This document shows, one piece after another, positions 5,836 through 41,631 of a stretch of 64,000 nt of DNA (position 1 is the first letter of the stretch; the number at the start of each line of letters is the position of its first letter). Below the pieces are notes generated by a model. That model did no database searches and was not told where the DNA came from. It saw only the letters and a list, made by a program, of their open reading frames with translations. The position numbers and the translations under genes were made by a program. The stretch comes from Vitrella brassicaformis CCMP3155 (lineage: Eukaryota; Protista; Chromerida): NCBI GenBank assembly GCA_001179505.1, contig CDMY01000341.1, positions 48,925-112,924 on the forward strand, written 5' to 3'.

Positions 5836-8800
5836 TCACCCGGCCGCCCCGCCTACGGCCCCCGGAAGTGAAAATCGCAGCACCTCTACTTCATCGGCAA
5901 CCATGAAGTCCAACGAAGTTGAGGTATCAGAGGACCATATGACGTCCACCCGGCATTGCCCTGCCGCTGCCGCTGCCGCTTCCGGGTCGACTGCCCACAG
6001 TCTTAGCCCCGTCGCCCCTTGCGAAAGTCTAGTCGCCAATGTCTGTGTCTGTCCTTGCGATAGGACAGACACCGACGAGCCCACGATCAGCTTTGCGATT
6101 TGGTCCACGCCATTGGGCTCAATGTCCCTTCGCAGCACAGAGACACACTGCGGCGTCGTTGAGGGTGACTGGAAGGTGGGCAGGGAGAAGCCAGCTATCT
6201 TGAAATTGAGGCCAGCCACCTCATAGTCGTTGGAGGCGCGCGCACTTGGTAGCTGAGGGGGCGGCAGGACGCTGGCGTCGACGAAGAAGCCGTGGATGTC
6301 TCCATCGGCCCGCACGAGGAAGAGCAGGCAGCTCGCATCGCCCACACGATTGAGCATGTCAGTGTACGCAAACCCGTGCACAGTGGCCCTGTAGTCAATG
6401 AAGCACGCCAAGGAGAGGAGAACAAGAGAAGAGCATCATGGGCTGAGGTAATCGATGGTGTATTTTGGCTCTCTTACTTGTAGAGCAGCTCAATGCCTGT
6501 CATCTGTGTGCCCGTCTTCTGCAGTACGGCCATCAGCTGACTGGCGGAGGCGATCACAGAGGGGCTGGGGATGCACTGCCCATCGCCATGCAGCCGCATC
6601 ATGGGCTCCATCGCCAGGCCGTGTCTCTCCATCGCCGCCATGAGTGGTGCCTTCAGCCGTCGGGGCGCATACGGGGGGTCGACCACAGTCATGGGCGCAG
6701 CAGCACGCAGGCGGCCGGCGAAGTCGATGGCGAGCGCATCGGCTGCGATGTTGGCATCGTGTGAGGGAAGATACTGTTTGAGCATTGACGAGAGGCGCTT
6801 CACGGTAACCGCAAGATCGGCGATTATTGCAAGCCTCCGGTGGGGGGCTCCTGCTGGCAGAAGTACCTCGAGCAGGTTAGCGGCCGACGAGTGGACAAAG
6901 ACCGCCATGCGCAACTGATCAGCAGAGACACAATGAAGGAATGCAGATAGATAGTACTTTCTAAATGAGCACCACGACAAACATCATTGCGGCCTTTCCC
7001 TTACTGCTGCGATGTGTTCGCTCGTCATGAAGAGATGCAGTACTCCGTCCACTGAATGCACATTCCCCTCTATCTCGGTGCGGCCTCTGAAGCGTCTCTC
7101 AATTGCTTTGTTGAGAGCATCCAGATGGGATCGATAAAGCAGGACCACCGTCAGCGTGGAGACCGACTCAATCTCGAGGACCGACCAGATGCTCGACAGA
7201 ATGAAGGCACCGGGATCGACAACATAGGCCGATGGCACTGAGGCAGGGAGACACGGAGACACGGAGCCGTAACCTGATCAGCGAGTGGACATTTTCTTCA
7301 TTCTTTCGCTACTTACCGTCTAGTTTCATGACCAGCTTCTTGATGTGGGGCATTTGGTCCTTGTGATCGCCCAGTGTGATGCCCTCTCTCTCGTCCTCGG
7401 CCTTGATGAACTCACGGCGAGTCTCAGACACATAGCCCAGATGCAGCTGGTCGATCGTCCCACCACCTCCATTGACGAGAGCCTGGCGCGCCCCTCCTTC
7501 GCTGCCGCAGATGCTGAAGTCACGGATGGCTGACATGTGGGGACGTGTGGCTGCCGCAAAAAGTGCAACAGCGTCTCCCTTGACGAGGAGCGTCTTCACC
7601 TTCTGGAGACTCTGTCGAATACGCAGTGGAATACTGATCTCGCACCCTTCCTCCTCTTGACGCAACTGCTCGACAGTGAGCCTTTCGGGCATCCTCCACA
7701 CACAGACGCACGCCAGGAGGCTCAATACGTCCGATGAAAACATGTCCATCACCCGCAAATTCTCGAGTTGTGCACCACTTCGCAAAAGCATCTTTGCCAC
7801 CCCCATGCCGATGCGGCTCTTGACGGTCAAACTTTTCACTCGCACGAGTAAGTCAGCTCTTAGGGCTTTGAACTCGGGAGGCTCTGGTGGGAGGGCGTCA
7901 GTTGGCGGGGTCCAGCCCTCCTCGCACTCGATGGACATGCTGAATCCACTTTTCGGAGCGCACCCTCCAAGCGACAGCGTGTTCACCAAGTTCTTGTCGA
8001 TAGGCCCGTTGGATGGTCGCGCCACTTGGTTCTGCGTGACGGTCCAGACGTAGCGGTATCCGGGCCGGACACCGCCTTGATCAATACTTGTGACAGAAGG
8101 ACAATCAGGGTCCTCCGGCTGTGGCTCAATTTCCACATTTTAGAGTTTCTGCAAGATGCTGAGCAGCTGCGGACCGCAGCCGGGGACTTTGTCGAACCGG
8201 GTGTAGGAAACTAGATTGTTTAGTGGAATGTCTCGCACCTCGTCAGCACAGCGCAGAAAACGGCAACAGACCTTGCCCGATGCCGCGCACGTCGTATTGA
8301 TGAATGTGGCCAGCGCCTTGAATGTCGCAGAATCGTTGAGGATCAGCGAATGGCAGTCGCTGCGCCGCATGCTTAGGTCTAGGTAAGTGATGCACTTCGA
8401 GCAGCCACGATCCACCAAACACTTCTACAGCCAAAGCACATTCGAGGAAAGAGCGTATTTGTGCGATGACCCCTTTCCCGAGCCCCTTTCCGTGCCGTTC
8501 TTTCCTTTCTGTGCCACCTGCAGGTCCCTGAAACCGTCTCTGATCATATCGGTGGATTCGATCTCGTAGACTTTGATGCGGAGAATCACTCGAAGGTTCG
8601 CGAGAGGCCCTGGACTCCCCTGCTGGCCCGCTGGGATGGACTGCAGCAACTCAGCCAGCTGCAAGGGCATCATTTCCATATTCTGAGGCATTTCTAGCTG
8701 GACTAGGGACTGTGTTGTGGCGATGAACGCCCTGATATGCGCCATGTCGGTGGATACTGAGAACACGCGCTGCAGAGCTGGCATGGCCCATCCCCGTCCA

Positions 8801-23393: not shown

Positions 23394-23857
23394 ATATTCA
23401 AGGGGATAGTGGAGAAAGTGCGTGCCTGTATGTGTGTCGGCTGACTCGGCTCTTTCTGACGATGGACAGAAAGGGCGACACGGCGCGGCATGTGTGTGGT
23501 CTGACTGCATAGTATTTGCAAGCGCAAGTTTATCTCGGTTCTTTGCGTGATGCGTGTCGGTGGATGGACGCTTTATGGACGACTCTCCTTCCTTCATGTG
23601 TCAACGCATTCCGCTTTTACAGAGTCTGTGTAGCCCTCACGACAAGCCTTCAAAAAGCTGTGTTTGTAAGCCCACACAAACAAAACAGGAGGGCGAGGGT
23701 GCCCCTCTCTGATGCGATCTCCTCCCTCCCTCCCTGATTCTTTCACATATCTATCTTCTATCTTTTATCAACAACATGCAGACCAGTCAGTAGCGCATTG
23801 ACCAAAAGGGCGCTCTCTTGGACAAACACAGCACATCGCAGCACCGCCCCTCTCCCT

Positions 23858-24635
23858 TTAGTCCTCGGCCTCAGCATCGACAGGCAGAATCGTCACATCC
23901 ACCTGAACAAAGCACATGGTCCACACACACAGGGGTCAACAATTGGAGCACACTCATCCCGATCAACGCAGACCCTTCTCACCTTGAAGATTGCGATGGC
24001 GCTGTCCATCGCCGGGCCCGCCTGCGCACCGGGGGCATGGGGAGGCCCGCGGCCGTGGGGAGGGGGCGGCACTGCAGCTGGCGCATTCTCGGCATGAGGT
24101 GGCGGGGGAGGGGGCGGGTGGCCTTCACCAGCAGCAGGGAGCGGTGGAGGTGGAGGGTGAGCGGCACCAGCAACGGGACGAGGGGGCGGGGGGCCCTGTC
24201 CGTCGGCGTGCGGCTTGGGTGGAGGCGTCTCAGTCGCATTGGGACGGGGCACATACTGATAGAGGGACAGACAGAAACAGCACCAACACACAAATGGGCG
24301 GACGGCACACACCTGATGATGACAGCCATCTTACGGCGAGTGTGATGATCCCATTGCCGGGGTTCATCGCGAGGAACGAGAGCGTCCACGAGCCGCTGCA
24401 GCTGTTGGACGTACCGTTCTGCACCAACACACAAGCATACAGACACACACAAGGTGAGAGAGAGCTCATCCACCCAATCGTCATTCATGGGTCAATCGTA
24501 CCTGTCCGCGGACCTGCAGACACCCGAAACTATTGGCCACATCGACGAGAGGCATATCGGGCGTCGCGTCGACCGCCCACCCGAAGCCAGCACGGTCCAT
24601 CGCACCTGGCAGAAACACACGCATACGCACACACA

Positions 24636-24674
<39 letters not shown>

Positions 24675-25378
24675 GATGGGAAGCTGACCAACGAGTCTAT
24701 CTCTTGCTATGCCGTCATCTTTCTCACCAGGCAGAACAATCTGCAGCAGGTCGCCCTGGTTGACCGTCACGTTGGTCTCCCCCGTCACGGGGCCACCCTC
24801 GGCGGCAGCAGCCGGCCCCTGCTGACTCATCTCAGGCACGACAGTGGTGGTGTTGGCCGTCTTGCCCCGCTGCAGTGCCCGGGCCGCCCTCAATGCCCTC
24901 CTAGGCGGCGGGCTGCGGCGGTCGATTTCCACTTTAGCACAGCAGAACTTGGCCTCCACCGACACATTTGGGAAGATCACTCGCTTCTCCGGCAGCTCGT
25001 ACTCGATGATCTGGCATGAGGGGTCGGTGTCCTGGAAGCGGTAGACGTATCTGCAGCCGCTGAAGGTGAGAGGAATGGAGGCAGGCACCTGCATAGACAG
25101 ACACACAAAGGGAAGCAGAAACGCCAAGAGTGTGAAAGACACACAGGATCTTTCACACAGGGGCCGGGCATCGAAAAGGTCCACATCGTGTGAAAGATGG
25201 GTGTCTGTCTTTCACAAAAGGCCCCTGTGTGAAAGATCCTCACCTCTTGGCCGTTGATGATGAGGGTGGTGTTGCGCTGGCTCGTCACGGTGATGTCCCG
25301 GCGGTTGTCGACGCCCACGACCTGCGCGGTGGTCGAAGCCGCCACGAGGGCAAGGCAGAGCAAGAAGAGATGCACCAT
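23858..25378 (-). CDS. Secreted hypothetical protein with proline-rich segments, multi-exon
   Basis: Signal peptide MVHLFLLCLALVAASTTA. Exons joined by GT-AG introns (e.g. 25089-25243). Cys-containing beta-rich middle exon (TFSGCRYVYRF...AKFCCAKVEI). The last exon is VDVTILPVDAEAED*. Confidence 0.65.
25145..25240. repeat. Intronic inverted repeat with about 20-bp arms
   Basis: AGGATCTTTCACACAGGGCC at 25145 pairs with GGCCCCTGTGTGAAAGATCCT ending at 25240. Extra TGTGAAAGA/TCTTTCACA copies lie inside and beside it. Confidence 0.85.
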
Positions 25379-26287
25379 CGTGGATCAGATGAGAAGGGAG
25401 CTTGCTGATGTGGTGGAGATGAATGGATGTGCTTGATGAGCGGCAGGACGACACGTGAGAGCAAGTCCGCCATCCTGCACAGACAGTCAGAGATCAGGAA
25501 AGCATTTTCAGCATCTCAAAGCCAGATCTCAGTGCGCTGTTTATTGTTTTACGACATGCCCGAAAGCCTCTGGGTGATTTAGCTGCTTGCGAAAGCAATT
25601 AACGTGCGCAGGAGAAGCGCCGACATGGCCTGGGCGGAATTGCGCGGCCAATGCCTCGACTTCATCCATCGCGAAGCCGAGCGAGATGCTCTACATACGT
25701 CTACATACCTTGAGTGACGTTGGCAGCCTCCAGCCTCTACACAGCGGCCCTCTTCCTCACACACGTCGACTTCCCCCCTGCCGGCCATCGTCACGCGGGA
25801 GCCATATCGCACCCAAAAGGTCGGAATGTGGACAGACAGACCGACAGTCAAGGAGCGAGGGACAAAGGGAGCGGGGTAGGAAGGCTAAACAGTGTGGTTG
25901 GTGTGCGGTTGGATTGCATGCAGGCGTTTGGCTGAGCCGAGCTGAGCCCCGTGTGGTGGCGTTGTGGAGGCTGGTGGGGCGGCACGTAGAGTTTGCCGGC
26001 GGGATGGGTTGCCTGTTCGCTCATTGAACTCAATGGATCTCGAGGACCGAGTGACGTCTGACGCTGCCCGGACGTGTCCTCACATTCGGAGACGACGCCG
26101 GTCCTTGCCTCACCTCATCGTTCGCGCAAACCCTGAACCCCAAACCCTTGCTCGAAGCTGGCCGGTGTTGGCCATGACGTGAATGTTCACCATGTAACCA
26201 ATAAGTAAGAAACAAAAGCAGTGTCTTTCACGTCCATACCAAAGAAACGCTGCGCATGCCCTCACATCACACAGTGTCGGTCACTGT

Positions 26288-28181
26288 TCATTCACCCCTG
26301 GTGCCATTCACTCCCTCCCCAGGCAGACCATTCGTCCGCATCGCATCAGTCGTCTCCCCATCCTGCCCCCTCTTGCTCGGCAGCTCAGCCGCGCCGCCCT
26401 CCGCCACGGCCGCACTGCTGTTGCCCGACCTGAAGCGATTTGACGCCCCGATGAAATCGATCAGCTGCGGGCACTCTGCTGGAGCGTCACTGCTGCTGTC
26501 ATTGACGTGCCGCGCAGGGGATGAGGGGGGCTGGGGGTTGGCAGATGGCGGGGCGGGGGATGGGCTGCGCCTGGTGGTCTTGTGTGGGTTGGCGGCGCTC
26601 GTCTGGTTGTTGGCGATGGTGATGACGGTCTGGTGGAGGCTCCTGAGCTCCTTGACGGCGTCCTTCAGAGTCACGCGCGCGCCCACCCTGACATACAAAC
26701 ACCCAACCACACGCAGCATGCAAACAGCGCCAAAGAGTGCACCATGATGCATCTGTGTTGCCACTTGGTAAGGTCCTCCGCCACTTGACTCAGCGCATCC
26801 ATGAGGTCCTGCATTCTGCTCGCCACACCGTACAGAGCCAGCGACTGGTCTTCGACCTTCCCTCTCTCAACAGGCGTCGCCGCCGCTGTCGACTGTGCAG
26901 CGTTTTGCACTGTGGGCTTCGACCGAGCGGCGGGCTGCTGCTGCTGCTGCTGTTGCTGCTGTTGTGACACTGCGTCGGTGAATGGCTTTGCGGGGGGAGA
27001 GGGGGCGAGAGGTGGAATGGGGAAAGGAGCGGGGGATGTCGACACGGGCGGCAAAGGGGATGACACGGGTGTGCCTGGGACAGCCGGTGCCGCCGTTGGG
27101 TTGGGCGCTGCTTCTGGCTTTGGTGTGGGCAGCTGCTGCTTGGTTGCCCGTGACTCCAAAGCGAGATGGACCAGGGGCTGGATGGACTGAAAAGGGACAC
27201 AGACAGACAGACAGACAGTCAGACGTGCAAATGTGTGTATGTGTGAAAGCTTTGGTGGAAGACCTACCTCGAGTGGCGGGAATCGCATCAGACGCTTCAG
27301 GCACCCATTCGTGTCCATCGACAACACTGCACACATGGACGGATCGGACCGACCGATGTGTGTCTACCACCGTGGCCCCATTGCCTTGCTGTCGTCGCTT
27401 ACAGTGCGTTCGGACGAACTTGAGCATTGCAATGGCGAAGAAGTCCACCTGAGCAGGTAGGCGTGTAGACGCACACAGATATGCCACCCAATGCCGCCCA
27501 CACACACAGGTTCAGCCAGGCTATCTTTCTCACCAGGGGCAGCGCATCAGACGACTCGCGGCTCAGCTGCTTGACGTCCTTCTTCTTGACAGCGTTGCCA
27601 AAAGGATTGTCGGCCTGTGGGGTCGATCCCTTGCTGCCGGTGGTGCTGCTCTTATGCCGCATCTGGTACGCATCGGCGAAGAACGCATCCCATATGTGGC
27701 ACGTGTCGTCCAGGTGGAACTCCCGGCTAAACAACAGCCGCACCCAACGCCTGCACAAGGACAACAGACAGACCATCATACATCAACAAGGGAACCGAAC
27801 CAAGGAATGATGAATCAGCATCTTATATACAGTAGGAACAGCTGCGGTTCAATGTCATTGGCGCAGAGGTGCTGGTACAGAGGGCCGTCGGCCGCCTTGA
27901 GCAGGCTGTGGAAGATCTGCTCGCACCGGACCACACCCGCCGATTGCTGCACACCACACACATGCACCGCACGACACGGATGTGCACGATGGATTGATGG
28001 ATGAACAGCCGCAATGGCTGGGTCGGTCGCTGCTTACGGGTTTTTTCGGCGGTGCAGGAGTGGGTCCTCCCATGCCACGCAGTGCTGGTGGCACTAGAGG
28101 AGGGGCCCTGGCGGCGGGGGGGTCAGGGGCGGGCGCATAGATCTCCCTGACGGACCCCCCACAGACATCGTGCTTTGAGTT

Positions 28182-28220
<39 letters not shown>

Positions 28221-29578
28221 CTGTGCGTGTTCGCACTTCATGCCAAGCTCCATTAGGGCGCTGAATATTGCGAATGCGTCGCTTTCGAGGGCCTCCTCGC
28301 TGCCGCAACACAGCTGACTGCACACACTGCACACACAAAGGGGCGCCCCAGTGGTGCGTGTCTGGGCTAGGCGTGTGTGTGGATGCCTACGTGTGAGCCT
28401 TTGAGGTGCCCTCGCTTTGCCTGTACTGGTCGCGGAAGCACACCACATAGATGACCCCCAGCAGCTCATTCATGCCCTGCACACCACACGCATCCAACCA
28501 TACGAGAAGGAGGGCATACAAACATGTAGGTGGGTGGCATCGACATGCCTCCCTCCTTCCATCCCTCCCTCCCTCCCTGTCGATCTACCAACCTGTCTGT
28601 AGGAGATGTCTTCGTGTTCTTTGCTCCAGTTGAAGAGAATGCGCTGGAGGGACTTGCGCACGCTGTCACTCTGAAACAACTCACGCTCAGCAAACCTGAC
28701 ACGGACACACACAGGGAGGAAGGTGTGAGAGAGGGAGAGAGAGAGAGAGAGAGAGGGGGGCAACAACGGCGTCACGCACTCGGCGAGCCGCGATTTGCCG
28801 GCATGTGTGTGCTTTGCTTACGTCCTCTCGATGTCCTTCCAGATCTCCGCCATCAGCTCCTCATTCTTGTGCCGAACAAGCCATGGATTCTGGTACACCA
28901 CATCCAACGCACACAACACACCCAGACAGGATGCACAAAGGCGGGCAAACTGTCTGTGTGTCCTTCCTTTGCGCGCACGTGTGCTGCGTTGGAGAGGGGG
29001 TGGAACACATTTGGGTCCAGCCCGGTGAGGGCGCCAGGCTTGAGGAGCTCCTGGTGAGTGGCATTCATCTGCACACAGGGAGGGAGGGAGGGAGGACACA
29101 CACACGGCTGCCCTCCCGGTACCACAACCGACCCTTCTTGTGTCCACTCATCACCTTTTTGTATTGCTGCCTCTGCTCTTTGAGTTGTTCCACCCACTGA
29201 TCCGGCGAAGAGCCACTCAGACTCCCAAGGAACACACCCCAATACAGACGCCTGACAGCCAAGCCAACCAGGCAGAGAGAGCACCTTGTGAGTAGCCGAG
29301 CCGGCCGGTCGATGTGTCTGTCTGTATGTGCGTGCCTCGGATGGCCTACCTGAACTTGTTAAGTGGCTGTATGCCGTCGACCACCTCTGCAGCCACACGC
29401 AGGGGGTCACACAGACGCACACGCGCACCCTCATAGTCCTGACACGGACAAGCACCACACATATGCCCGTCAGCCATTCAGTCCATCTCTTAAGACCGTC
29501 CTGTCATTCGTTGACCTGCGTTGTGACGCCGACATCGTGTTCGCCATGCAGCACGTTCTCCTTGGCCTCCTCACTCAT
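26288..29578 (-). CDS. TBC-domain Rab GTPase-activating protein (TBC1D5-like), multi-exon
   Basis: VRRLYWGVFLG, FHPLS, EIWKDIERT (arginine finger), LQRILFNWSKEHEDISYRQG-MNELLG (glutamine finger), ESDAFAIFSALM, RWVRLLFSREFHLDDTCHIWDAFFAD. Low-complexity C-terminal tail. Confidence 0.88.
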
Positions 29579-29734
29579 TGCTCCCGCAGGCCACTCGACT
29601 ACTGAGCAATGCCTTTCTACCGCTTCTTTCGCAAGATCCGGCAAGGCACGCCAGCTGTGCGAGATGCGTGTGGCTTCAGAGGCTTTCAAAGGCTTTCGGC
29701 CGTTCTGACTTTCCGTGAAACCGCTCACTTCCCA

Positions 29735-30372
29735 GAGAGGGCAAGTTGACTTACTTGGGGGCGCATCAATTGATGCGCCGATTGATTGCGATATGGGCAG
29801 GGAGGAGGGGAGAGGGAGAGAGGCATGTATTCGTGGTCCCCTGTGTGTGTGTGTGTGTGTGTGTGCGTGGCTCTATCTCTTCCAGACATATATACGAACT
29901 CACTAACTGACGTGCTATTAATTGTAGTTTGCATTCCGTGTGATTGACCTGCATACTCACTCTTGTGTGTGGTGCGTCAGTTGGGAGTGAGTCCTGTCTT
30001 TGTGTGTGTGTGTGCGTGTCCAGCTGGGGCGGGGAGCGGCTCTTTTCGCCCCGATGAGGCCGCGAGGACATCATGGGTGGGTGATGTCATGGCCGAGAGG
30101 GGCAAGGGGGCATGTGTGTCTGTGAGATAGACAGACGTGTACTCTTGCTCACTTTCTGCGTTGTTCTGCCATGTGTGCTGATGGTTGGATGGCTGGATGG
30201 ATGGCTTGTTCTGTGGGGTGTGTATCGCGGCAGAAGATGATAGAGACGCGACACACACAGGGACACTTGCTGACTTTCTTCTTGCGTGTGCGTGCTGCAT
30301 CGATGGATGGATGGATGGATGGATGACTTGGTCTGTGGGGGGTGTGTCGCGGCAGAAGATGATAGAGACGCG
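29735..30372 (+). repeat. Direct repeat copy A (about 640 bp)
   Basis: Collinear with 36353-37145: GAGAGGGCAAGTTGACTTACTT...CCAGCTGGGGCGGGGAGCGGCTCTTTTCGCCCCGATGAGGCCGCGAGGACATC...GGCAGAAGATGATAGAGACGCG. Confidence 0.92.
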
Positions 30373-30910
30373 CCTGTGTGACGGCCGAGACAGTACTGGC
30401 TGACAGACAGGCGGACTGATGGGACGGGTGGATGGAGGATGGATGGATGGATGGATCGACTGATGCGTGTGACCGGTCAGTCCATCCAGCCGCGAGTGAC
30501 GAGACACACATGGATGTAAGCCAGACAGACAGACAGATGTATGGAATGGATGCTGGCCCGAACGGCGAGAGGAAAGGACCGATAGATGAACCATTCATGT
30601 ACATACGTACATGTCTGTGTCCAAGGTTTCAACACACACACTGCAGTGACCGGACTGCACTGCACTGCACCGCACTTTATAATTATAGACACCCACAGCG
30701 GCCGTCATTCCACCCCACACACGGTAGGTACGGCCCCAGAAGACGGCATGCACACGAGTGGCACGGACGTCCCCGACCACGCACTGTATGTATATGTACA
30801 ACCAAGGCGACAATCAGCCCACCCAGTGAGTGCCACCCGTCGGCATGTGTGCTGTGCACCCACCCACCAAAACACATGCATCGCATCCCAGCATCCACCC
30901 ACCCTTCCAC

Positions 30911-32570
30911 TCATTCATCTTCCTCTTTCACCCGCACCAGCTCTGCACCCTCTGTCTTGACTGCAGCAGGAGCAGCAGCGCCAGCTCCACTTGCTGGCGG
31001 CCCATCGTCGTCTTTCAGCATTGCCGGCTGAGAGGTGCTGCCTTCCAGCTGGGGTGGCGTGGTGCCGCGGTGGATGAGAGGCTGCAGGGGGCAGGATCCT
31101 GAGGATTCCTTCTGCAGACGGCCATTCTTGGCGCACGAGACGCAGCACTGAACAGAACAAGGGAACCACCACACACACATACACTACACGCCTGTCTGTG
31201 CGGTGCGCGCGGAGGGAAATGCTCATTCACCTTGCCGTGTTCCACCAAGAGAAGGTGCAGCGAGTGCTTGATGTCGTCAGGCACCCTGGTTAACCGGGTC
31301 ACACACAAACATGAACACATGATCTTAGGCTCGCAGTGTCATACACACAACTGACTGACCTGCGATTGAGATGTTGGTACGCCTGTATGCGCGTTGCGGC
31401 CTGCGGCACCCAATGCAGCCGCTGCGCGATATGGAGCACGTGAGTGTCCACGGGAAACTCCGAACGACCTGGAAAAGGGAGATCAACCAGCAGCTATAGC
31501 TATGGGCCATGTGCATGGGCCTACCCAGTCCGAACATCATGACACACGCGACTGTCTTGGGACCTACGCCATTGTACCTGACCAATCAGCATACAAGCAC
31601 TTGTGTAGCTCCATTGCTGGCCGCTCATTCCGTTGCTGTATACCTCAGGAGCGCCGGCTTGACCTGTTCGTCGGCCACACCCCTCAAATGCTCCAGCGAC
31701 GGCTCGCCAGATACCTGAACAACACGCCAAGTTGGGAGATAGATGGCGGCTGCTGCTGCTGCTTGCCTCGCTCACCACATGTCCCTCATCGACTACAGAT
31801 TGCAGAATCGCCTGGATGCGCTTCACCTGGAAGGAATAGCAACAGCCATCCCCCTGTAAGTGTGCTGACGCCCTTGCTTCTCGCGTATCCACCTTGGTGT
31901 GGGCCAGGCCGCCCTTCTGTATGGTGGCCTCGACGTCTGCAGCGGGGGCATCGAGCACCGCCCGCCACGTGGGGAAGGCAGCCTGAATGACAGATAAGCC
32001 AGCTGGCGGTGAGATCAGCTGCAGATGGATGGATCGGTCACAGCAAGTGATGCTGACCTTCAAACTCTGGAATGTCTGCTTCGATAGCTTGTCGGTGGTG
32101 TTCTGCGAGAGCATCACACTCACCAGCATGTCCAGCACACTGCAGTCCTGAAACGCACTCACACACGCCACAAGACACACAGGCAGGTGTTTCCATTGGT
32201 GTGGTGTGGGGTGGCATCTCACCCTTCCCTTGACGCGGTCGCCGCCATGCAGATCCCGGAGCGCCCTCTCGACGGCGTAGCACTCGTCGGCAGAAGGCCG
32301 CCGAAGATTCGGATACGGCTCCGCAGCCACCATCTCGCCACTGCCCTCATCAGCACTGACCGCCACCATCTCATCCTGACCCGCTCCTTCCTCGACTTGA
32401 ACTAATGCTTTCTCGTCCTCACTCTTGACGGCCTTCTCGTGCTTGCGCACCCTTTTGTGGCCGTGAACGCCGCTGCTGTCATCATGTTCTCGTTTGACGC
32501 TGATCTTCTTGCTATCTTGCTCCTCGCTCTTTGCCTGGCGGGCGCCCCGCGCCGAGCGTCGCAGATCCAT
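30911..32570 (-). CDS. HhH-GPD superfamily DNA glycosylase (Nth/DML-like), multi-exon
   Basis: MLSQNTTD, GGLAHTK/VKRIQAIL, HhH motif LLRYNGVGPKTVACVMMFGLG, FPVDTHVLHIAQRL (catalytic Asp), LHLLLVEHGK, then C-x2-C...CPL. Basic and acidic N-terminal extension. Confidence 0.9.
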
Positions 32571-32708
32571 CAGTCACCTCATCGCCCCGTTTTCGCAGCT
32601 CGCATCGTGGGGGCTCGAGACTGTGGGCGTCTCAGACAGGAAGAGGTGAGAAAGAAAGTTGGTCAAAGCGGACATTTCGGCGAGCAGAGGAAGTGTCCTT
32701 TTTCGACC

Positions 32709-33877
32709 ATGGAGCGGCAGTCGACGCCGCATGATAGCGAAGGTCAGCCTGGCAGTGCATCGGCCGACGGAGCGGCCAGACAGGGGATGGATGTCATTGC
32801 GAGGCCGCGGCATCCCGTCATGGAATCGTTTGATGATGATATGGACGACGGCACAGACGAAGAGGAGGATGATGGTCCTTTGGAGGGCGGCTTCTTCACG
32901 TTGCCAGAGCCGGCCGTTCGTGCGGCCATTCCGCCCATGGAGATTGCCCTGCATGTCGATCTCGCCCCGGCAGTGGAGCTGCCCGAGGACGACCCCATGA
33001 TGCAGGCCACCATCGAGCAACACGACCACGTCGAAGAACCCCGAGCGACGGTATGTACGTTCACATCACTTGAACAAATAAGCTGGGGCCGATCAATTGA
33101 TACAGAGAGCCGGGCATGCATGCATCCATTCGCCTTGTATATTATTGTGTGCCTGGGTGCTCTTGTCTCACTCTGTCAGCTTGTATGGGTTAGTGCCCAA
33201 GGCAGATTTGCTCTGCCGCATCGAAGGCAGCGTGCGACCGCAGACGGCCGTCAGGTGCGTGCGCACACGTGCGCAAGAAACCATACAGACAGCAGCTGCG
33301 TCTCATTCAGTACTCAGTGCATCATTTAAACGTCTCTCTCTGTCTGTCTGGCTCTCTTTAGGCATTACAAGCGGCTGGGTCTGCCCCTCCCCCAGGACGA
33401 GCAGGAGCAACTCGACTTGTTCACCTGTGACCCTCACCAGGACATCTGGCAAGACTTCTCGCCTCAGCTGGATCGAATTCGATACATATTCGGTACGCAC
33501 GCAAGGTCAAGCCCACAAAACGCTACGGACAAGTCGTTTTCAATGGTCGCCTGGCTGCTCTTTCATTCCTCCATTTGATTCACTTGTGCAGACACGCTGG
33601 AGGTGGTTGAGGAGGTCACTGCCGAGGCCGTTGAAGATCGCTTCAAAGACCGAGTGGTGGTCCTGGAGATCCGCTTCTGGCCGGACTTCTTCACCAAGAC
33701 ATACGGCCACCAGCTCGAGGGCGTGCTGCAGGCGATGGAGAGGGGAGTGGAGAGGGGACGAGCACGGTGCAACCATGACATAGAGGTACACACACATCAT
33801 TTGATTGCACTTGCTTGACACACATCCACACAGGCACCCGTGTCTTTCCTCTCTCTCTCTGCCGTCTGTCTGTCTGT

Positions 33878-33909
<32 letters not shown>

Positions 33910-36272
33910 CTGTATGTGTGTGTCTGCAGGTGGGTTTGATTTGCTGCGCATCATATATATATATATATGCAAGGAGGACTTCATGAAGGTTGTGGGCTTC
34001 GCCGTCGCTCACAAGGAGCAGCTCGTGGGCGTGGAGATCCCCGCTTACAGCTCACTTCTCTCGCAGCCCCTCAAGGTGAGTGAGGCGAAGGAATGGAAGG
34101 AAGGGGGAGAACACACAATACATAACCATCAACACACACATGGTTGTCTGTCTGTCTGTCTGTCTGTGCAGGATTGTGTTGAGACCATCCACGAGGCTGG
34201 CCTGGGCATTACCATGCCCGTCTCTGACATTCCCAGCATCTCACCGCCCATCCCTGACGTGGCGGCCCTCGTTGAGCAGATCCGCCCCCGCCGCATCGCC
34301 GCCAATCTGGCAGCCGACCACCCGGCCGCCCTGCAGCTCATCAAAGCGGGCAACATCGGGGTGGAGCTCAAGGCGGAGAGCCTGCTGGACTTGTCGCGTG
34401 CGCGTCAGCTCAATGATGGTGATTATGACCTGTACATTTCCATCAACAGCGACCTGCCGGCCCTCTTCAACTCAAGGCTCCCTGAGCGGTACCAGGCCAT
34501 GCAAGACCTCCTCGAGGAGACAGCATTCACCAGGACTGAGCTCATATATATGAGCTGCCACGAAATCAGGACGTCGTTGCTGCCGGACGACGTCACGTGG
34601 GCTGTGCTGGAGAAGTTCTTCTTCGTGCTGGATGACGGCCAGGGGGGAGAGGGTGGCGACGAGGAGGGAGATCAAGGGGGAGGGGGAGGGGGTGGCAATG
34701 ATGTCGGCGGCAACGACGACGACGAGGCTCATGACGATGATGGTCATGGGGGCGGTTTTCCTGGGCCGCACCCCGATGAAGCGCGGCCGCTTAGCCCGCC
34801 GCGACGTTCCCCATCTCACGGCGGCCAAAAGAGGAGCCCACGTGGCAGCCGCAGCCCCTCGCCGCCCCGCAGCAATCGGCCGGCAGCAGGAGAGCCCACC
34901 GCGCGTCTGCCTGAGTCGCCCATCAATGACTTTGACGCTGACCTCGACATGGAGCTCGAGGACCAAACCCCATCGCCCCGCAAGCAGCCCCGGAGCCGCC
35001 TGGATGACGACGAGACGCGGCCGCCTGGGCAGGCGGTCAGTGGACGGCTGCGCGATGAGGGAGAGGGAGAGGGATGGGAGCAGGACGACCCCTTCAAGAC
35101 TCCGCCTCGTCGTGTGCCGTCCATCACGCCGCCCGAGCAGTCGCCGGCCGTCTCCGATGACGAGGAGGACGAGAGCGACGAGGAGGACGAGGGTGATGAG
35201 AGCGACGGGGGCGATGACAGCGAGGAGGGCGGGGTGAAGGTCATGCCGTGTGTGGCGGTAATGTATGGGTGTGTGGCTGCCGAGCTGCTGCGGGCCGCCC
35301 AGCGAGTGTTGTGCTGCTTGGCCACTGACATCATCCGCACTTCCAAGGCCATCGAGCGCGCCGTTATCGTCAAGGCGACTGAGGTGATGCTCCTTCGCCA
35401 CGCCCGTGAGTGGGTCAGACGGCAGTGTCTCGTGCGCTTGATGGCCTCGTCGGCGATGCTCTTGGCCGTCCAGGATGGCGTCAACACGTCGAAATCTGGC
35501 GGGGGGAGTGATGAAACCGGTGCAGCTGCCGGCGGCGAGGAGGAGTCGGTGGTGCAGCCGGACGCCCTCAGTGTGTCTCCGGGCCAGAGGGGCGAGAAGA
35601 GGGGAAGGGAGAGTACGGCGCCAAGTGTCTCGTTGCGGCCGGCCAAGCGAGTCCGCCACAGCCGCCACGGCACGAAGAGGAAGAGAGCGAGTGGGCAGAA
35701 GATCGCAGGGGAACCACAGGCGAAGAGACGCCGCCTGTCCGGTACGCACACAGACACAGACAGACACAGAGACACAGAGACACAGAGACAGCGGGGAGAC
35801 CTCATGGCTGACGGGTGTTTTGACGGACGATGGGGTCGTGTGTGTTTTGGTCGGTGCAGAGTTTTCGATCCCCGGGCCGTCGATGGGCCGGATGGCTGAG
35901 GGGGCCATCCAGGGGACGAAGAGGAAGAGGCAGACCGGTAACCAGCACCACCACCAGGAGCAGCACCAGGGGCAGCAGGAGCTCCACCAGCATCAAGACC
36001 AAGGAAACCAGCAGCCCCAACAACAGACCCTTACCACAGATACCACAGGCAAGAAGCGCAGACGCGGCACGCGGCTCAAGGCCGAGGCCGAGGCCGCTGC
36101 TCTCGCTGCCGAGGCCGAGGCATATATCGCCCGCCGCACCAACAAGCGACAGCAGCAGCAGCAGCAGGAGGAGGACGACGAGGAGGGAGGAGGGGAGGGG
36201 AAGGGCGAGAGCGGAGGGAACGGTGGGGCCGCCACCCGGGGATACAATTTCCGGAAGCGACGTCGCTGCTGA
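32709..36272 (+). CDS. Adenosine-deaminase-fold protein with degenerate active site and a long acidic/Pro/basic C-terminal tail; exon 1/2 junction ambiguous
   Basis: Successive exons give PKADLLCRIEGSVRPQT (cf. PKxELHxHLxGS), VEDRFKDRVVVLEIRFWP (cf. EvRfsP), LVGVEI, GLGITMPVS (cf. HAGE), RRIAAN (cf. RIGHG), NIGVELKAES (cf. vEvcPtSN) and SINSDLPALF (cf. sinTDDP). Confidence 0.72.
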
Positions 36273-36352
36273 GTGATCCACTCACTCACTCACTCACTCA
36301 CTTTTGACTCGGCTGACTTCGGATGGGCGACATTCGTTCGTTGCATGTGTTT

Positions 36353-37145
36353 GAGAGGGCAAGTTGACTTACTTCGGGGCGCATTGCATTGATGCGCCGA
36401 TTGCGATATGTATGGGCAGGGAGGAGGGGAGAGGGAGAGAGGTATGTATTCGTGGTCCCCTCTGTGTGTGTGTGTGTGTGTGCGTGGCTCTATCTCTTCC
36501 AGACATATATACGAACTCACTAAGTAACTGACGTGCTGTTTATTGTAGTTTGCATTCCGTGTGATTGACCTGCATACTCACTCTTGTGTGTCCCTCCTTG
36601 TGTGCGAATGTGTGTGGTGGGTGCGTCAGTTGGGAGTGAGTGCTGTCTTTGTGTGTGTGTGTGTGTGTGTCCAGCTGGGGCGGGGAGCGGCTCTTTTCGC
36701 CCCGATGAGGCCGCGAGGACATCGTGGGTGATGTCATGGCCGAGAGGGGCAAGGGGGCAGGGACACTTGCTGACTTTCTTCTTGCGTGTGCGTGCTGCAT
36801 CGATGGATGGATGGATGGCTGGATGGCTTCGTCTGTGGGGTGTGTGTCGCGGCAGAAGATGATAGAGACGCGACACACACAGGGACACTTGCTGACTTTC
36901 TTCTTGCGTGTGTGTGCTGCATCGATGGATGGATGGATGGCTGGATGGCTTGGTCTGTGGGGTGTGTGTCGCGGCAGAAGATGATAGAGACGCGACACAC
37001 ACAGGGACACTTGCTGACTTTCTTCTTGCGTGTGCGTGCTGCATCGATGGATGGATGGATGGCTGGATGGCTTGGTCTGTGGGGTGTGTGTCGCGGCAGA
37101 AGATGATAGAGACGCGACACACACAGGGACACTTGCTGACTTTCT
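36353..37145 (+). repeat. Direct repeat copy B (about 790 bp)
   Basis: Collinear with 29735-30372, with more copies of the internal 122-bp unit. Confidence 0.92.
36759..37145 (+). repeat. 122-bp tandem repeat, about 3.2 near-identical units
   Basis: AGGGACACTTGCTGACTTTC starts at 36759, 36881, 37003 and 37125. Confidence 0.95.
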
Positions 37146-37303
37146 GCCGCGTGTCTGGGACTGAAGTTTGCCGCGAGTGGAAGCCAAGGCCAAGATTGCC
37201 TAGGGTGCTTCCTGATCGCGAAACAACTGCTGCGCTGCTAAGCTCGCAGACACACAGGGGCATTCCTCGGCGTGTTATTTTATTTGGCCCTATCTATGAG
37301 TGG

Positions 37304-40300
37304 ATGAGTCAGCCGCCCTCGAAGAAACGCCGCAGCGGCGCCGGATCTACGAAGAGGGAAGGTGGTGCTATGAGTGGTATGAGTGCGGCTGCGATGAGTG
37401 ATCATGAGTCGGATGGCGGCCGGCCGGCTGTCCTCCCGCAGTATCTCAACCTGGGGGAGTTTGTGAGGGCCCGTTTCAGCGAGATGAAGACGTTCGCCAC
37501 CAACCTCGCTGAGTCGAGGTCCACCAAACGGGCCTTCCAGCTGCTGCCCAAAGACCAGAGGTATGTATGTATGTGCATACAACAAGCAGACGGAGGGAGG
37601 CAGCAAGGCAGACGATTCTTTGACTCATGCATTGGCTCACGGCTGGCTGCTTTGTCTTGCTTGTGCGGGTGGGTGTGCCTTTTCATGTAGGCGTCGTGCG
37701 ATGTCACACAATCCCTATCGCATTCCGAAGCGGCACCGCACCATCGTCCTGCGCGATATGGCACGCACTCCGCCAAAGGTGGAAAGAGATGGAGAAGTTC
37801 ACGTGAGAACTGCGAAGATTGGTGTTTGTTGGGTTTGGTGCCTGCTCACGGATGTGATGGCAGGAGAGTCGCCGTGTGCGCAAGGACAGGCGGCGGCCCA
37901 GGCACCTCCTCGAGATCTATGCGGCGAGGTCAGGCTTGGAGGGATGGATAGCTATGGTATATTATTCGACAATTGCCTGCCACCTTGGTTTGTCTGAGGG
38001 GTGTCTGTCTGTCAGGTCAGCCAAGAAGCGATGGCTCGAGACCCACATATGGCACGGTAGCTATATGCATGCGCGATGCTGGTTTGCGACTCCTGAAGAT
38101 GTGTCTGTCCATGCAATGCAGCCAAGCGTATGCACATGGAGGAGCGGTGGGGCTATGCGCTGGCCAGCCATCCGGTTGAGAGGTGCCAACGGGCCGTCTA
38201 CCGAGCCGCACACAGACGATGTGTCATTCATGACAGGTGTGGTGTGCATCCGAGAGAAAGACGGAGCCGCTGGCGCAATCCTGCCGGATCTGTGTCTGTC
38301 TTAATTAATGGTGCAGGTCATACATGCAGGTGGTTGAGGTGCGGGGGTCGCCTGAGAGGATCCGCCAGCTCTTCCAATGCTGCCAGGCCGACCTGCGCAT
38401 CATCTTCAACGCTCACTTCCTCCCCGGCCACCACCGAGGCACCATCCACCTCTACACACACGACACACGCACACTCATCGCACCGGTGTCATTCCTCTGG
38501 GAAGTCCAGCAGCATGACGATGATGCCGCTGCCGCCCGTCGTGTGTGGCTGTGGGTTCACCCGAGTGCGGCCAAGACGTTGATGGCGGCGCTTGAGGGGG
38601 CCGTGGGGGCGATGGACGGACAGGGGGAGAGTGGCGGCCTGAGTGTGGGGCTGGTTGATGGGATGGTGTGTTATGAGCTGACGGGCGCCCAGAGCATGCA
38701 GATACTGGCCAGGGCTATCACGCCAACGAAGAAATGTGAGCAGGGACGCAGGGAGGGGGACGGGGCAAGCGCTGGTGTTGATGTGTGTGTTCATGTCTGT
38801 CTGCGTGTCAGGGTTGACCAGCCCTTCTGGTGGCATTTGGAAGGAGCTGCTTCGATCCTGCCGACAACACGTAAGATGGCTGGACACTCACTGTGCTCAC
38901 GTTCCTGGGTGTGTGCTTAGGTGTTGCCGCCTAGTGGCGCTGTGTTAGGCTTGGAGATCCAGATACCGCCAGTGCTTGGTAGGTAAGCCAACACACCCAA
39001 CACGACACGACTGGTCAACGAACACCGGAACAGCACACGTTTGCCTCGTCGTGTTTTCAGGGCCGTTCCCACCGGGAAGGCGACTTCGAGACCTGCCAGT
39101 CGACAATGGTACGCGCCTGCAGCGGAGATTGACATCATGACATCATATCGATTGTTTGCGTTCATTTTCTATTGTCTGTCAGACCCGCCAAATGTCGTGA
39201 CGCCCCCCTGGCTGCTGCAGTGGCCCAAAGAGGTAGCACAAAGCCGCCTGTGGGACGCGGATGCGCGGGAGAGAAGCAGACTATCAAAACCAAAACGGTA
39301 AGACGGATCCAGGAGCAGCACATGTGCAGGAAGCCACATTGGTGTCGTCTTACCGTATTGCCGGTATTGTGTCAGGTTCACGACTCGTAGCCGCAAGCGT
39401 AAGACCAACATCAAAGCTCTCTTGGAGAGGATCGAAGCCAAACAAGGTCAGTCAGTGAACAGAGGGCAAGGGAGGGGAAAGATGGCGATTCACTCTGGCC
39501 ATTCTTTCCCCTCAGCTGCCCTCGCATCCCTCCTTGAGGAGCCGTCAGCACCATCCCAGCCAACTGCTGCTGCTGCTCCGTCACGACCGCCAAAGCCACC
39601 TGCCGGCCCACAGGCGTCTGCTCGTCCATCAGGTGTGACGGAGGATCACCCGATGGCCGAGGGGACCGACAAGGGCACGGTGTCAGCGGGCGTGCCTGCG
39701 CTGCTCGTCTGCCGCAGGTGGGGTGAGGTGACGTGAATGCAAACAGGGGGAGGGATTAATACGGTTGTGTGTGTTGGTGTATGTTGTGTCTTCAGCAAGG
39801 ATGACGGTGGTGGGTTCGGTGGCTATGACCTCATCTTGCCCACGGGATGCGGCGCACCCAGACTCTGGACGTACACAACACACACACACACACTCTCACA
39901 GAAAAGCGATGAACAGTGGGAGAGGAGCGGCTGTCCCTTGTGTTGTGCGTGTCAGGTTGATGGCTCGTGCCAAGGCGCGACCTATCGGTCACCGCGACCG
40001 CCACAAGCTGCACGACATCGGCGTGGCCGACTTCCCGTGGGACTTCCCTGAGACGGAGGCGGGCAAACTGCTGGAAGCTGAGCTGGCCAGGTGACACACA
40101 GCAGCACAGCTACCTGCATCCCGGACACAGGCTCACGTCGTCTGTATGTGCGCCATTCAGGGAGAGCATGGTGCGGTGGGGCCGGCGTCCGGCCTCTAAG
40201 CGCGTCAACTATCCCCTCATCGGCATCCCCTACCCGTTCTGCCCTCACTGGACAAACGCATGCACAAACGCCATGCAGCAGCAGCAGCCGCAGCAGCAGC

Positions 40301-41631
40301 AGCCGCAGCAGTCTAAAGGGGCAGTGGCGGAGAGGCAGAAAGATGAAAAGCGGGGCGGCTTCTCGGCCATCAGAACTCTCTCAGAGGTGAGGACAACGGA
40401 CGAAAGCCGTCTACTCTCGCCGTCTGCACCTGTGCTGAGTCCATTCAGATTCTTGCATTCTCGAAGGTAACGCGGAAGCGACTGGCAAATGACGCCGCAA
40501 CACCTCCCTCTGATGCCGACCTGCTCGAGTGGGGGAGCGTGCTGCTGCCCGTCAAGGTCATGGTGCACCGCAGAGGCATCGCCGACCGGCTCTCTCACCT
40601 CTTCCACATGACGCCAGACGACGTCAGGGCATTCATCAAAGGCGAGAGGATCGACGAATCGTCTCCCCTCTGCCCGCCAGCAGTCGCTTCCCACCTCTCG
40701 AGCTGGATCGACCTGCCCAAGCCGTCCAGACCGCCACGCCGGCCACCCCCCTCCCCCGCCCCCCTTGGTCATCCGATTGGCTCCTCTGTGCCCCGTGTGC
40801 CGCGGCATGAACCGCCGACTTTCTTGGAGGGAATGCATCCGGCATTCAGGCACCGGAAGAGCAAAATGAGGGACAAGCTTAAAAGGCGGGAGGAGGCCAA
40901 AAAGGGTGGTGCTGGCGACAACGAGGCTGATGTGAGCGGTGAAGGTGAGGAGGATGTGTGTGGTGGCTTTGAGTCGAGTGTGCCGTGTCGAAGTGTGATT
41001 GGCTTCGTCACCACTGGAGGTGGGCAACAAAGGGGGAAGATCGGATGGATGGATGGATGGATGGATGGAGGCAGGAGCAATGACCCTTCTCTTGCTGTGG
41101 ATGCATTGATTGATATATACAGGTCAGTCCCTCAAGCTGGGCATCGGCTGTGGCACAGGTGAGAACTAACTGTCACACATAGCTATGTGCGGGTCCGTCC
41201 ATCGTATTGATCTGAGTGTGTGTCCATCTCCCACCGTCTTAACACTGACAGGTTGTGTGTCGGCTGCCTTCTTCCTCCGGGCTGCATCGGAGCAGATGCA
41301 AGTCATACACCAAGGTGAGTGAGCACAGAGGAAGGAGGCGAGCACGGCGCTGGGCTGCTCTCGCAATCACTCACTCCTGGCTTGTCTGTCTGTGTGCATG
41401 GGCGGTGGGTGGTTCGGTTCAGAGTTGGGAGGCAGGAAGTCGCCCCGAGCAGAGTTGCGTTCGATATGTGTGTTGGTGTGGCTGCGACAGACGTCATCGA
41501 GATACTACAGACCCGGTCAGGCAGTGAGTGACAATTGGCGACACGATGTTATGTGTGCATCCTTCCTGTGTGTGTGTGTGTGTGTGTCTGCAGCATGGGT
41601 GACGCCGTCGGCCAATGTGATGCCGTTCTGA
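37304..41631 (+). CDS. POP1: RNase P/MRP protein subunit POP1, multi-exon; 3' end approximate
   Basis: FVRARFSEM, AFQLLPKDQ-RRRAMSHNPYRIP, RWLETHIWH, VWLWVHPSA, GYDLILPTG, DFPWDFPET, RRPASKRVNY, IGFVTTGG. These are the POP1/POPLD conserved boxes. Confidence 0.93.

What the first reader, a model, noticed from the sequence alone, without database searches (positions are those of the whole stretch)
29735..37145. DNA glycosylase plus pseudo-deaminase pair enclosed by long direct repeats: a candidate inserted or excisable cassette
Seen: two genes (HhH-GPD glycosylase on -, ADA-fold protein on +) start only 138 bp apart. Both 3' ends run into copies of the same 640-790 bp direct repeat. Outside the repeats, the TBC gene (-) and POP1 (+) point away. 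Inference: removing the cassette and one repeat would leave TBC<-[repeat]->POP1, the head-to-head layout common in this window. That fits Campbell-type integration of a circle, or duplication-mediated insertion, of a two-gene module acting on modified or damaged bases. No transposase or integrase is encoded inside. Alternative: the repeat has minus-strand splice-like signals (GTGAGT at 29960, GTAAGT near 29753), so copy B may simply be a duplicated TBC 5' UTR/promoter.
Basis: partly seen in the sequence, partly recalled or inferred. Interest (0 to 1): 0.75.

Follow-up and report, generated by a model that had tools for sequence, protein, structure and literature searches.

The report
Repeat-flanked gene pair from segmental duplication
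In the alga Vitrella brassicaformis, a DNA-glycosylase gene and a deaminase-like gene really do sit between two copies of a ~0.65-0.8 kb repeat, but this looks like ordinary duplication within a small family of copied segments and not a mobile cassette.

Summary
Copy A of the repeat (29735-30372) and copy B (36353-37157) are direct repeats 6618 bp apart. Aligned bases are about 96-97% identical, with several indels. Each copy ends in a 122-bp minisatellite. Between them lie a 9-exon HhH-GPD glycosylase gene (minus strand) and a 6-exon adenosine-deaminase-fold gene (plus strand), head to head. TBC and POP1 point away on either side. No recombinase or transposase domain was found.

The mobile-cassette reading is only partly supported. 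The genome is Vitrella brassicaformis CCMP3155. The repeat has five copies at three loci, and four of them lie just downstream of deaminase-like genes or their remnants. The whole module (glycosylase, deaminase piece, repeat) has an older paralog on contig C489, with intron divergence about 0.13. That paralog starts 14 bp after the end of copy A and ends inside the repeat's minisatellite. So the window holds about 1.1 head-to-tail copies of a 6.6-kb module.

Other partial copies (C973, and an inverted duplication on C489) have different boundaries. Both genes keep their introns and resemble ordinary algal or apicomplexan nuclear genes. There is no target-site duplication.

The most likely origin is recombination-driven segmental duplication at a minisatellite-bearing low-copy repeat. 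Integration of a circular copy is not excluded (about 0.15). Synteny, long reads and read depth could not be tested.

The parts
27399..28775 (-). Exons of the left-flank TBC/RabGAP gene. Its 5' end points toward repeat copy A, and a candidate first coding exon reaches about 29575.
   Evidence: Weak exon-level Pfam RabGAP-TBC matches (E 4e-4 and 0.016). The first-exon candidate was read by eye from ORF 29504-29728 and is an inference.
29735..30372 (+). Repeat copy A (R_A): a unique core at 29735-30112, followed by 'unit 1' and 'unit 2' of the 122-bp minisatellite (about 30136-30372).
   Evidence: Compared with all other copies it carries a private 28-bp deletion. It keeps the ancestral 'unit 1' that copy B has lost.
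30386..30910 (-). 3' flank of the glycosylase gene. This is the left end of the module shared with contig C489, and it contains a (GGAT)n run at about 30430-30455.
   Evidence: Homology to C489 (L010 8214 downward) starts at 30386 +/- 3. K2P divergence is 0.21.
30911..32570 (-). HhH-GPD DNA glycosylase gene (gene G), 9 coding exons.
   Evidence: Exon map from transcript protein P0001. Pfam HhH-GPD 61.7 bits against a cutoff of 26.2. Best solved-structure matches are ROS1 and endonuclease III. Relatives are algal and plant HhH-GPD proteins.
32571..32819 (.). Head-to-head intergenic region, a putative bidirectional promoter. An alternative in-frame ATG for the deaminase-fold gene lies at 32709.
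   Evidence: Scraps of 32506-32640 also sit next to deaminase-like paralogs on C489.
32820..36272 (+). Adenosine-deaminase-fold gene (gene A, public model P0002, 873 aa, 6 exons) with a long acidic/basic low-complexity tail.
   Evidence: The HxH zinc-ligand motif reads L-C-R when aligned to Plasmodium ADA.
36353..37157 (+). Repeat copy B (R_B): a unique core at 36353-36757, followed by 3.2 units of the 122-bp minisatellite (36758-37157).
   Evidence: 'Unit 1' (145 bp) is deleted and the array has expanded, compared with copy A and the C489 copies.
37371..41162 (+). Right-flank POP1 gene (RNase P/MRP subunit). The ATG at 37371 was read by eye.
   Evidence: Pfam POP1_N, POPLD and POP1_C on exon ORFs. 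Sequence inspected.

Best explanation
The window holds about 1.1 head-to-tail copies of a 6.6-kb module made of the glycosylase gene G, the deaminase-fold gene A, and the repeat R. R is a low-copy sequence that normally lies just downstream of genes of an expanded, duplication-prone ADA-like family, and it ends in a 122-bp/(GGAT)n minisatellite. Copy B is R in its usual place, downstream of A. Copy A is an extra R placed at the other end of the module.

Most likely the extra copy arose by ordinary recombination-based segmental duplication. That means either unequal exchange or tandem duplication of the module followed by loss of most of the first copy, or an older flanking copy kept similar by gene conversion. 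Breakpoints cluster at the minisatellite. No dedicated mobility machinery is involved.

Shown:
- the repeat and its five copies
- the paralogous module on C489 and where its ends fall
- the relative divergences
- the intron-bearing, apparently functional state of both genes

Inferred:
- the recombination mechanism
- the role of the minisatellite as a break or recombination hotspot
- that the two ~97%-identical direct repeats could still delete the gene pair by homologous recombination, as any such repeats can
For: 1. R has 5 copies at 3 loci only: C341 twice, C489 twice, C299 once. In C341 copy B and in both C489 copies, and probably in C299, it follows a deaminase-like gene or fragment in the same orientation.

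2. C489:5966-8214 matches window 30391-32640, with all 9 glycosylase exons intact. Two pieces matching 34855-35365 and one R copy follow in the same order. K2P divergence is 0.13 for introns, 0.21 for the 3' flank, and 0.15-0.19 for R. For the glycosylase coding sequence dS is 0.25 and dN/dS is 0.31.

3. That paralog starts at window-equivalent 30386, which is 14 bp after the end of copy A at 30372. It ends within the R minisatellite.

4. Copies A and B differ by only about 2.5-4% in substitutions. Each has private indels, so they are two real copies and much younger than the C489 split, or else homogenised.

5. Other duplicates of parts of the region have unrelated boundaries. C973:81682-84131 covers only the deaminase-fold gene. 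C489 1-6096 is an inverted duplicate of 23474-28435 that breaks inside glycosylase exon 1. C489 also has an internal 0.9-kb tandem duplication.

6. The ADA-like exon family has at least 11 matches on five contigs.

7. There are no mobility domains, no Rfam family in R, and no target-site duplication.

8. The genes have ordinary nuclear relatives: algal and plant HhH-GPD proteins and Plasmodium-type ADA.
Against: - The near-coincidence of the end of copy A with the left boundary of the older C489 paralog (14 bp) is not predicted by a random local duplication. It needs either a breakage hotspot or a module with fixed ends, and a module with fixed ends is also what a circular or concatemeric intermediate would give.
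- I could not show that the minisatellite is a hotspot. Tests for unit-like motifs at the module ends were not significant once (GGAT)n was masked.
- Recent duplication and old copies homogenised by gene conversion cannot be told apart.
- No population, synteny, long-read or read-depth data were available.
- The assembly is short-read (Illumina, velvet k=75; PMC4501334), so minisatellite copy numbers may be wrong.
Confidence: 0.6

Rival explanations
1. The G-A-R module circularised, with the end of R joined to the start of the G flank. It then integrated by homologous (Campbell-type) recombination into a resident R between TBC and POP1, or entered as a >1-unit concatemer. It remains excisable through the flanking repeats.
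For: The junction between copy A and the G flank (30372/30386) joins what are the two ends of the single-copy module on C489. On the 6.6-kb circular map, both ends of the C489 copy fall within about 120 bp of each other. R also occurs alone at C299, so a resident solo R is conceivable. Removing the module and one R would leave TBC<-R->POP1.
Against: There is no integrase, recombinase or Rep domain in any ORF, and no target-site duplication or defined termini. The right edges of R fall at different phases of the 122-bp unit in copy A, copy B and C489. The only other module copy is 13-21% diverged whereas copies A and B differ by about 3%, so no plausible donor is in the assembly unless later gene conversion is invoked as well. 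Partial duplicates with other boundaries show that generic segmental duplication is active in this family.
Confidence: 0.15
2. A functional reading of the extra copy. Copy A was retained because it now supplies promoter or 5'-UTR sequence to TBC. This is the reader's alternative with the polarity reversed: copy A, not copy B, is the derived copy.
For: Copy A lies about 160 bp upstream of the candidate TBC start and has minus-strand GT donor-like sites inside blocks conserved in all five R copies (sequence inspection).
Against: No transcript evidence was available. The same conserved blocks also carry plus-strand acceptor-like and donor-like signals. They are conserved in copies that sit downstream of deaminase-like genes, which fits a 3'-flank or 3'-UTR origin. 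No Rfam family matches R.
Confidence: 0.1
3. Assembly artefact. The second repeat copy, or the linkage of flanks across the repeats, was created by short-read assembly or gap filling.
For: The genome was assembled from Illumina reads with velvet (k=75), then scaffolded and gap-filled (PMC4501334). The repeats are longer than the reads and contain a minisatellite.
Against: The two copies differ by private indels (28 bp and 145 bp, plus several of 1-4 bp) and by substitutions spaced every 100-200 bp. There are no N gaps in 29-38 kb. An independent older paralog has the same gene-repeat order.
Confidence: 0.05
4. A transposable element with terminal direct repeats (an LTR-type LARD/TRIM derivative) or a gene-capturing Helitron.
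For: Direct repeats of several hundred bp flank a roughly 6-kb interior. Solo copies of the repeat exist elsewhere.
Against: The interior genes keep 8 and 5 spliceosomal introns, which is incompatible with passage through RNA. There is no flanking duplication. The repeat starts with GAGAGG and ends with GACGCG rather than TG and CA. The repeat's right ends differ between copies. No RT, integrase, Rep or helicase domains were found. There are only 5 copies genome-wide.
Confidence: 0.03

Closest known systems
Low-copy repeats / segmental duplications that mediate non-allelic homologous recombination
   Same: Paralogous segments at a few loci with 75-97% identity. They carry whole intron-bearing genes, have mosaic boundaries, and include direct repeats flanking a gene-bearing interval that could be deleted or duplicated by unequal exchange.
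   Different: The scale is very small (0.64-0.8 kb repeats, a 6.6-kb period) and the organism is a chromerid alga. The breakpoints sit at a 122-bp minisatellite. No rearrangement polymorphism has been observed.
Campbell-type integration of a circular element (phage lambda, integrative elements, episomes)
   Same: The inserted DNA is bounded by two direct copies of a sequence also found at another site. The junction joins the two ends of a unit that is linear elsewhere.
   Different: There is no integrase or recombinase, and no short identical att-like core is defined. The cargo is two ordinary nuclear genes with introns. The empty site is unobserved.
Non-autonomous LTR elements (LARD/TRIM)
   Same: Direct terminal repeats of several hundred bp around a few-kb interior that lacks gag/pol.
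   Different: No TG..CA termini and no flanking duplication. The interior genes retain introns. PBS and PPT were not specifically searched.
Repeat-mediated extrachromosomal circular DNA and tandem amplification (for example yeast CUP1 or HXT6/7 loci; cited from my own knowledge)
   Same: Direct repeats flanking genes allow pop-out circles and copy-number change.
   Different: No circles or copy-number variation have been observed here. This is only a structural possibility.

Membership tests
Segmental duplication / low-copy repeat family | Paralogous copies of the segment elsewhere in the same genome at substantial identity over at least 1 kb | tested here: met
   C489:5966-8214 matches window 30391-32640 at 84% over 2351 aligned columns, and further pieces lie on C489 and C973.
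Segmental duplication / low-copy repeat family | Copies carry genomic (intron-containing) gene structure rather than processed copies | tested here: met
   All 9 glycosylase exons and the introns between them are present in both copies. Intron K2P is 0.13 and exon K2P is 0.07.
Segmental duplication / low-copy repeat family | Heterogeneous, mosaic boundaries among copies | tested here: met
   The C973 copy covers only 32762-36154. The C489 inverted duplication breaks in glycosylase exon 1. C489 also has an internal tandem duplication.
Campbell-type integrated circular element | Element-encoded or associated site-specific recombinase | tested here: not met
   No Pfam family other than HhH-GPD and A_deaminase in the ORFs of 29.7-37.3 kb that were scanned.
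Campbell-type integrated circular element | Empty site with a single repeat in related genomes or strains, or detectable circles | not testable with these tools
A metagenome scan gave only chance 20-mer matches.
Campbell-type integrated circular element | The junction joins the two ends of a unit that is found linear elsewhere | tested here: met
   The C489 copy begins at window-equivalent 30386, 14 bp after the end of copy A, and ends in the R minisatellite. This feature is shared with tandem duplication.
LTR-type element (LARD/TRIM) | Target-site duplication and TG..CA repeat termini | tested here: not met
   No flanking duplication beyond a non-positional 5-mer. The repeat starts GAGAGG and ends GACGCG.
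LTR-type element (LARD/TRIM) | Interior passed through an RNA intermediate (no spliceosomal introns in captured genes) | tested here: not met
   There are 8 introns in G and 5 in A.
HhH-GPD DNA glycosylase superfamily (gene G) | HhH-GPD domain above the Pfam gathering score, with the catalytic Lys in the hairpin and the Asp after it | tested here: met
   P0001 scores 61.7 bits against a cutoff of 26.2. The GVGPKT and VDTHV motifs are present in the window exons (read by eye against endonuclease III from my own knowledge).
Adenosine deaminase (PF00962; gene A) | A_deaminase domain above the gathering score | tested here: met
   64.7 bits against a cutoff of 27, but only profile positions 1-124 of 330 are covered.
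Adenosine deaminase (PF00962; gene A) | N-terminal HxH zinc ligands and the catalytic HAGE motif | tested here: not met
   Aligned to Plasmodium ADA, the ...ELHCHLD motif corresponds to ...DLLCRIE here. The HAGE-region alignment is weak and lacks His and Glu. The protein is probably non-catalytic.

The most novel reading that the evidence does not exclude
The 6.6-kb unit (glycosylase gene, deaminase-like gene, and a repeat ending in a minisatellite) is a gene-carrying cassette that propagates through a circular or concatemeric DNA intermediate. It would open and close at the minisatellite and re-enter the genome by homologous recombination with resident repeat copies. That would make it a recombinase-less, repeat-driven way of moving nuclear gene pairs in a chromerid.
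Probability: 0.1. Interest if true: 0.7.

Novelty: new member of a known kind. Interest (0 to 1): 0.25.

Why it matters
As it stands, this is a clean small-scale example of how a gene family and its neighbour expand in a compact, transposon-poor algal genome. Vitrella has only about 1.5 Mb of transposable elements (PMC4501334). Whole modules are copied, with breakpoints at a minisatellite-bearing repeat.

It matters for annotation. There are two intact glycosylase paralogs and many deaminase-like fragments, and the one available transcript is mosaic between the two glycosylase copies. It also flags a locus where repeat-mediated deletion or amplification could be polymorphic between strains.

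It would become notable only if circles, empty sites or new insertion sites of the unit were found.

Tried and rejected
1. A 'degenerate third 122-bp unit' at 30373-30520 that would extend copy A into the G flank. The similarity is carried only by the (GGAT)n run. With that run masked, the flanks score like shuffles.

2. Short unit-like motifs (ACTKGCTGAC, CTGACTTTC) at the module ends and left of both repeat copies. None is significant individually (p about 0.03-0.3).

3. An apparent old-divergence patch between copies A and B in the first minisatellite unit. It is an alignment of non-equivalent units. Copy B has simply lost the 145-bp 'unit 1' that copy A and C489 retain.

4. An ncRNA (for example a snoRNA cluster) in the repeat. 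No Rfam match lies inside R at E <= 1.

5. An LTR- or Helitron-type element. Rejected on the introns, the termini, the missing flanking duplication and the copy number.

6. Foreign (bacterial) origin of the pair. Rejected, because the relatives are algal/plant HhH-GPD proteins and Plasmodium-type ADA, and both genes have introns.

An exact 20-mer scan of metagenome contigs returned five chance hits with no extended homology. Literature searches found no description of this locus.

8. Neighbours of the C489 and C299 copies. Pfam gave nothing informative on C489. On C299 it gave unrelated genes (UCH, CLAMP, peptidase S9).

Exons were handled by reference and through the database proteins P0001 and P0002.
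Full report
**Identity of the sequence**

The window is G000:C341:48925-112924, in a genome of 72,700,666 bp in 1064 contigs. That is exactly the published Vitrella brassicaformis CCMP3155 assembly (PMC4501334). The public protein encoded here (P0002) is named as coming from that strain. The assembly is short-read (Illumina, velvet k=75, scaffolded and gap-filled). This matters for repeat copy numbers.

**Checking the observation**

The repeat finder, MAFFT and BLASTN all show a direct repeat.
- Copy A is 29735-30372. Copy B is 36353-36994 and continues to about 37157. The spacing is 6618 bp.
- Copy B ends in 3.2 units of a 122-bp tandem repeat with 98% matches. Copy A has two units.
- In a curated alignment of the unique core, 356 of 372 sites are identical, and about 7 of the 16 mismatches come from one small indel patch. 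The shared unit differs at 3-4 of 115 sites.
- Each copy has private indels. Copy A lacks 28 bp. Copy B lacks a 145-bp 'unit 1' and has an expanded array.
- There are no N gaps in 29-38 kb.

So these are two real, distinct copies.

**The genes**

Gene G, the glycosylase:
- The MMETSP transcript protein P0001 (368 aa) maps to nine minus-strand exons from 32570 to 30914, with the stop codon at 30911-30913.
- It matches Pfam HhH-GPD (61.7 bits).
- Its best solved relatives are ROS1 and endonuclease III.
- The hairpin Lys and the following Asp are present (read by eye).
- Its closest database relatives are algal and plant HhH-GPD proteins of the 'At3g47830' type.

Gene A, the deaminase-fold gene:
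- The public model P0002 (873 aa) maps to six plus-strand exons from 32820 to 36269.
- The Pfam A_deaminase match covers only the first 124 of 330 profile positions.
- Against Plasmodium ADA, the HxH zinc-ligand motif reads L-C-R. This agrees with an earlier scan note calling it a pseudoenzyme.
- The rest of the protein is an acidic/basic low-complexity tail.

Layout and flanks:
- The start codons are 138 bp apart if the in-frame ATG at 32709 is used, and 249 bp apart under the public model.
- POP1 on the plus strand is confirmed from about 37371 onward.
- TBC on the minus strand rests only on weak exon matches.
- No other ORF in the interval has a Pfam match, and no Rfam family lies in the repeat.

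I did not build a joined spliced model. Exons were handled by reference and through P0001 and P0002.

**What the rest of the genome shows**

The repeat is not unique and not high-copy. It has five copies at three loci: C341 twice, C489:2257-2765 (minus) and C489:25652-26102 (plus), and a core-only copy at C299:83199-83427.

The interior of the 'cassette' is also duplicated elsewhere:
- C489:5966-8214 matches window 30391-32640. This is the whole glycosylase gene with all nine exons intact.
- Two copies of a piece of gene A (34855-35365) follow it, and then the repeat. Order and orientation are the same as G-A-R(B) in the window.
- A second, degraded set on C489 is the other arm of a large inverted duplication, 1-6096 against 23474-28435.
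- C973:81682-84131 carries a paralog of gene A alone, with neither G nor the repeat.
- The most conserved deaminase-fold exon has at least 11 matches on five contigs, including a tandem cluster on C654.
- Scraps of the G start and shared promoter sit next to other deaminase-like paralogs on C489.

In four of its five copies the repeat follows a deaminase-like gene or remnant in the same orientation. Copy A is the exception.

**Timing**

| Comparison | Divergence |
|---|---|
| Window vs C489 module, introns | K2P 0.13 |
| Window vs C489 module, G 3' flank | K2P 0.21 |
| Window vs C489 module, gene A piece | K2P 0.10 |
| Window vs C489 module, repeat | K2P 0.15-0.19 |
| Two G copies, coding sequence | dS 0.25, dN/dS 0.31 |
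| Copy A vs copy B | about 2.5-4% |
| C299 repeat copy vs window and C489 copies | K2P about 0.3 |

The dN/dS of 0.31 suggests that both G copies have been under purifying selection. Copies A and B are several-fold younger than the inter-locus duplication, or else have been homogenised by gene conversion.

**The key structural point**

Homology between the window and the C489 module begins at window 30386, only 14 bp after copy A ends at 30372. It ends inside the repeat's minisatellite. The A-to-G junction therefore joins the two ends of a unit that occurs once, in linear form, on C489. In other words, the window contains about 1.1 head-to-tail copies of a 6.6-kb G-A-R module.

Three processes give this signature:
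- tandem duplication followed by loss of most of one copy
- integration of a circular or concatemeric copy
- release of the segment by breaks in two flanking minisatellite arrays

The sequence alone does not separate them.

I looked for finer clues and found none:
- a degenerate third unit in the G flank (not supported once (GGAT)n is masked)
- unit-like motifs at the module ends (not significant)
- flanking target-site duplications (none)

**Judgement**

The ordinary explanation fits most of the evidence. This is a duplication-prone family in which segments of different extent have been copied between and within contigs. A minisatellite-bearing low-copy repeat sits at the breakpoints. Both genes are normal intron-bearing nuclear genes of algal or apicomplexan type, and nothing encodes mobility.

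But it lacks a recombinase, a donor, defined termini or any observed empty site, so I give it about 0.15.

Copy B is in the family's usual context and copy A is the extra copy.
- An LTR-type or Helitron-type element is rejected on the retained introns, the termini and the copy number.
- An assembly artefact is unlikely given the private indels, but the minisatellite copy number should not be trusted.

**What could not be done**

- The whole-genome collection holds no other eukaryote.
- A metagenome scan with a conserved 20-mer gave only chance hits.
- Read depth, long reads and transcripts across the repeats were not available.
- The literature held here does not describe this locus.

Noticed in passing
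window 30911-32570 and L010 (C489) 6029-7707: The only transcript-derived protein for the glycosylase (MMETSP, P0001) is mosaic. Its first ~60 residues are identical to the C489 copy, while most later exons are closer or identical to the window copy. This could be a chimeric transcript assembly, a different strain, or gene conversion between the paralogs. No public gene-model protein for this gene appeared in the protein search, although one did for the neighbouring gene.
   Followed up: partly
C489 1-6096 vs 23474-28435 (L010, L011, L014): A large inverted duplication (87-100% identity) whose inner breakpoint lies inside glycosylase exon 1. There is also a 0.9-kb tandem duplication at C489 3129-4042 / 4344-5257 (97.5%). 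The copies lie at the very start of contig C489 and the window lies at the end of contig C341, so the assembly breaks near these repeats.
   Followed up: partly
C654:19219-25428 (L018), C489:27295-30667, C270:76380-76568: An expanded family of adenosine-deaminase-fold exons, at least 11 matches, including a tandem cluster of about five on C654. One match carries an in-frame TGA.
   Followed up: no
C489:29727-29798 (L014 1727-1798): A 72-bp scrap of the glycosylase start and 5' region is 96% identical to window 32519-32589 and sits beside a much more diverged deaminase-like paralog (exons about 55-67% identical at protein level). This suggests the shared head-to-head promoter piece is conserved or has been converted.
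   Followed up: no
window 29858-30003 and 36475-36652; C299:83199-83427: A core of about 170-230 bp of the repeat is well conserved in all five copies, including the oldest one (K about 0.3). It carries splice-acceptor-like and donor-like signals on the plus strand and donor-like signals on the minus strand. It could be a UTR exon. No Rfam match.
   Followed up: partly
window 32820-34400 (gene A): The deaminase-fold protein lacks the HxH zinc ligands (it reads L-C-R), and the public model matches only the first third of the Pfam domain strongly. It is probably a non-catalytic, nuclear (basic/acidic tail) protein. An earlier scan note says the same.
   Followed up: partly
window 1496-1795: The only run of N (a scaffold gap) in the window.
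   Followed up: no
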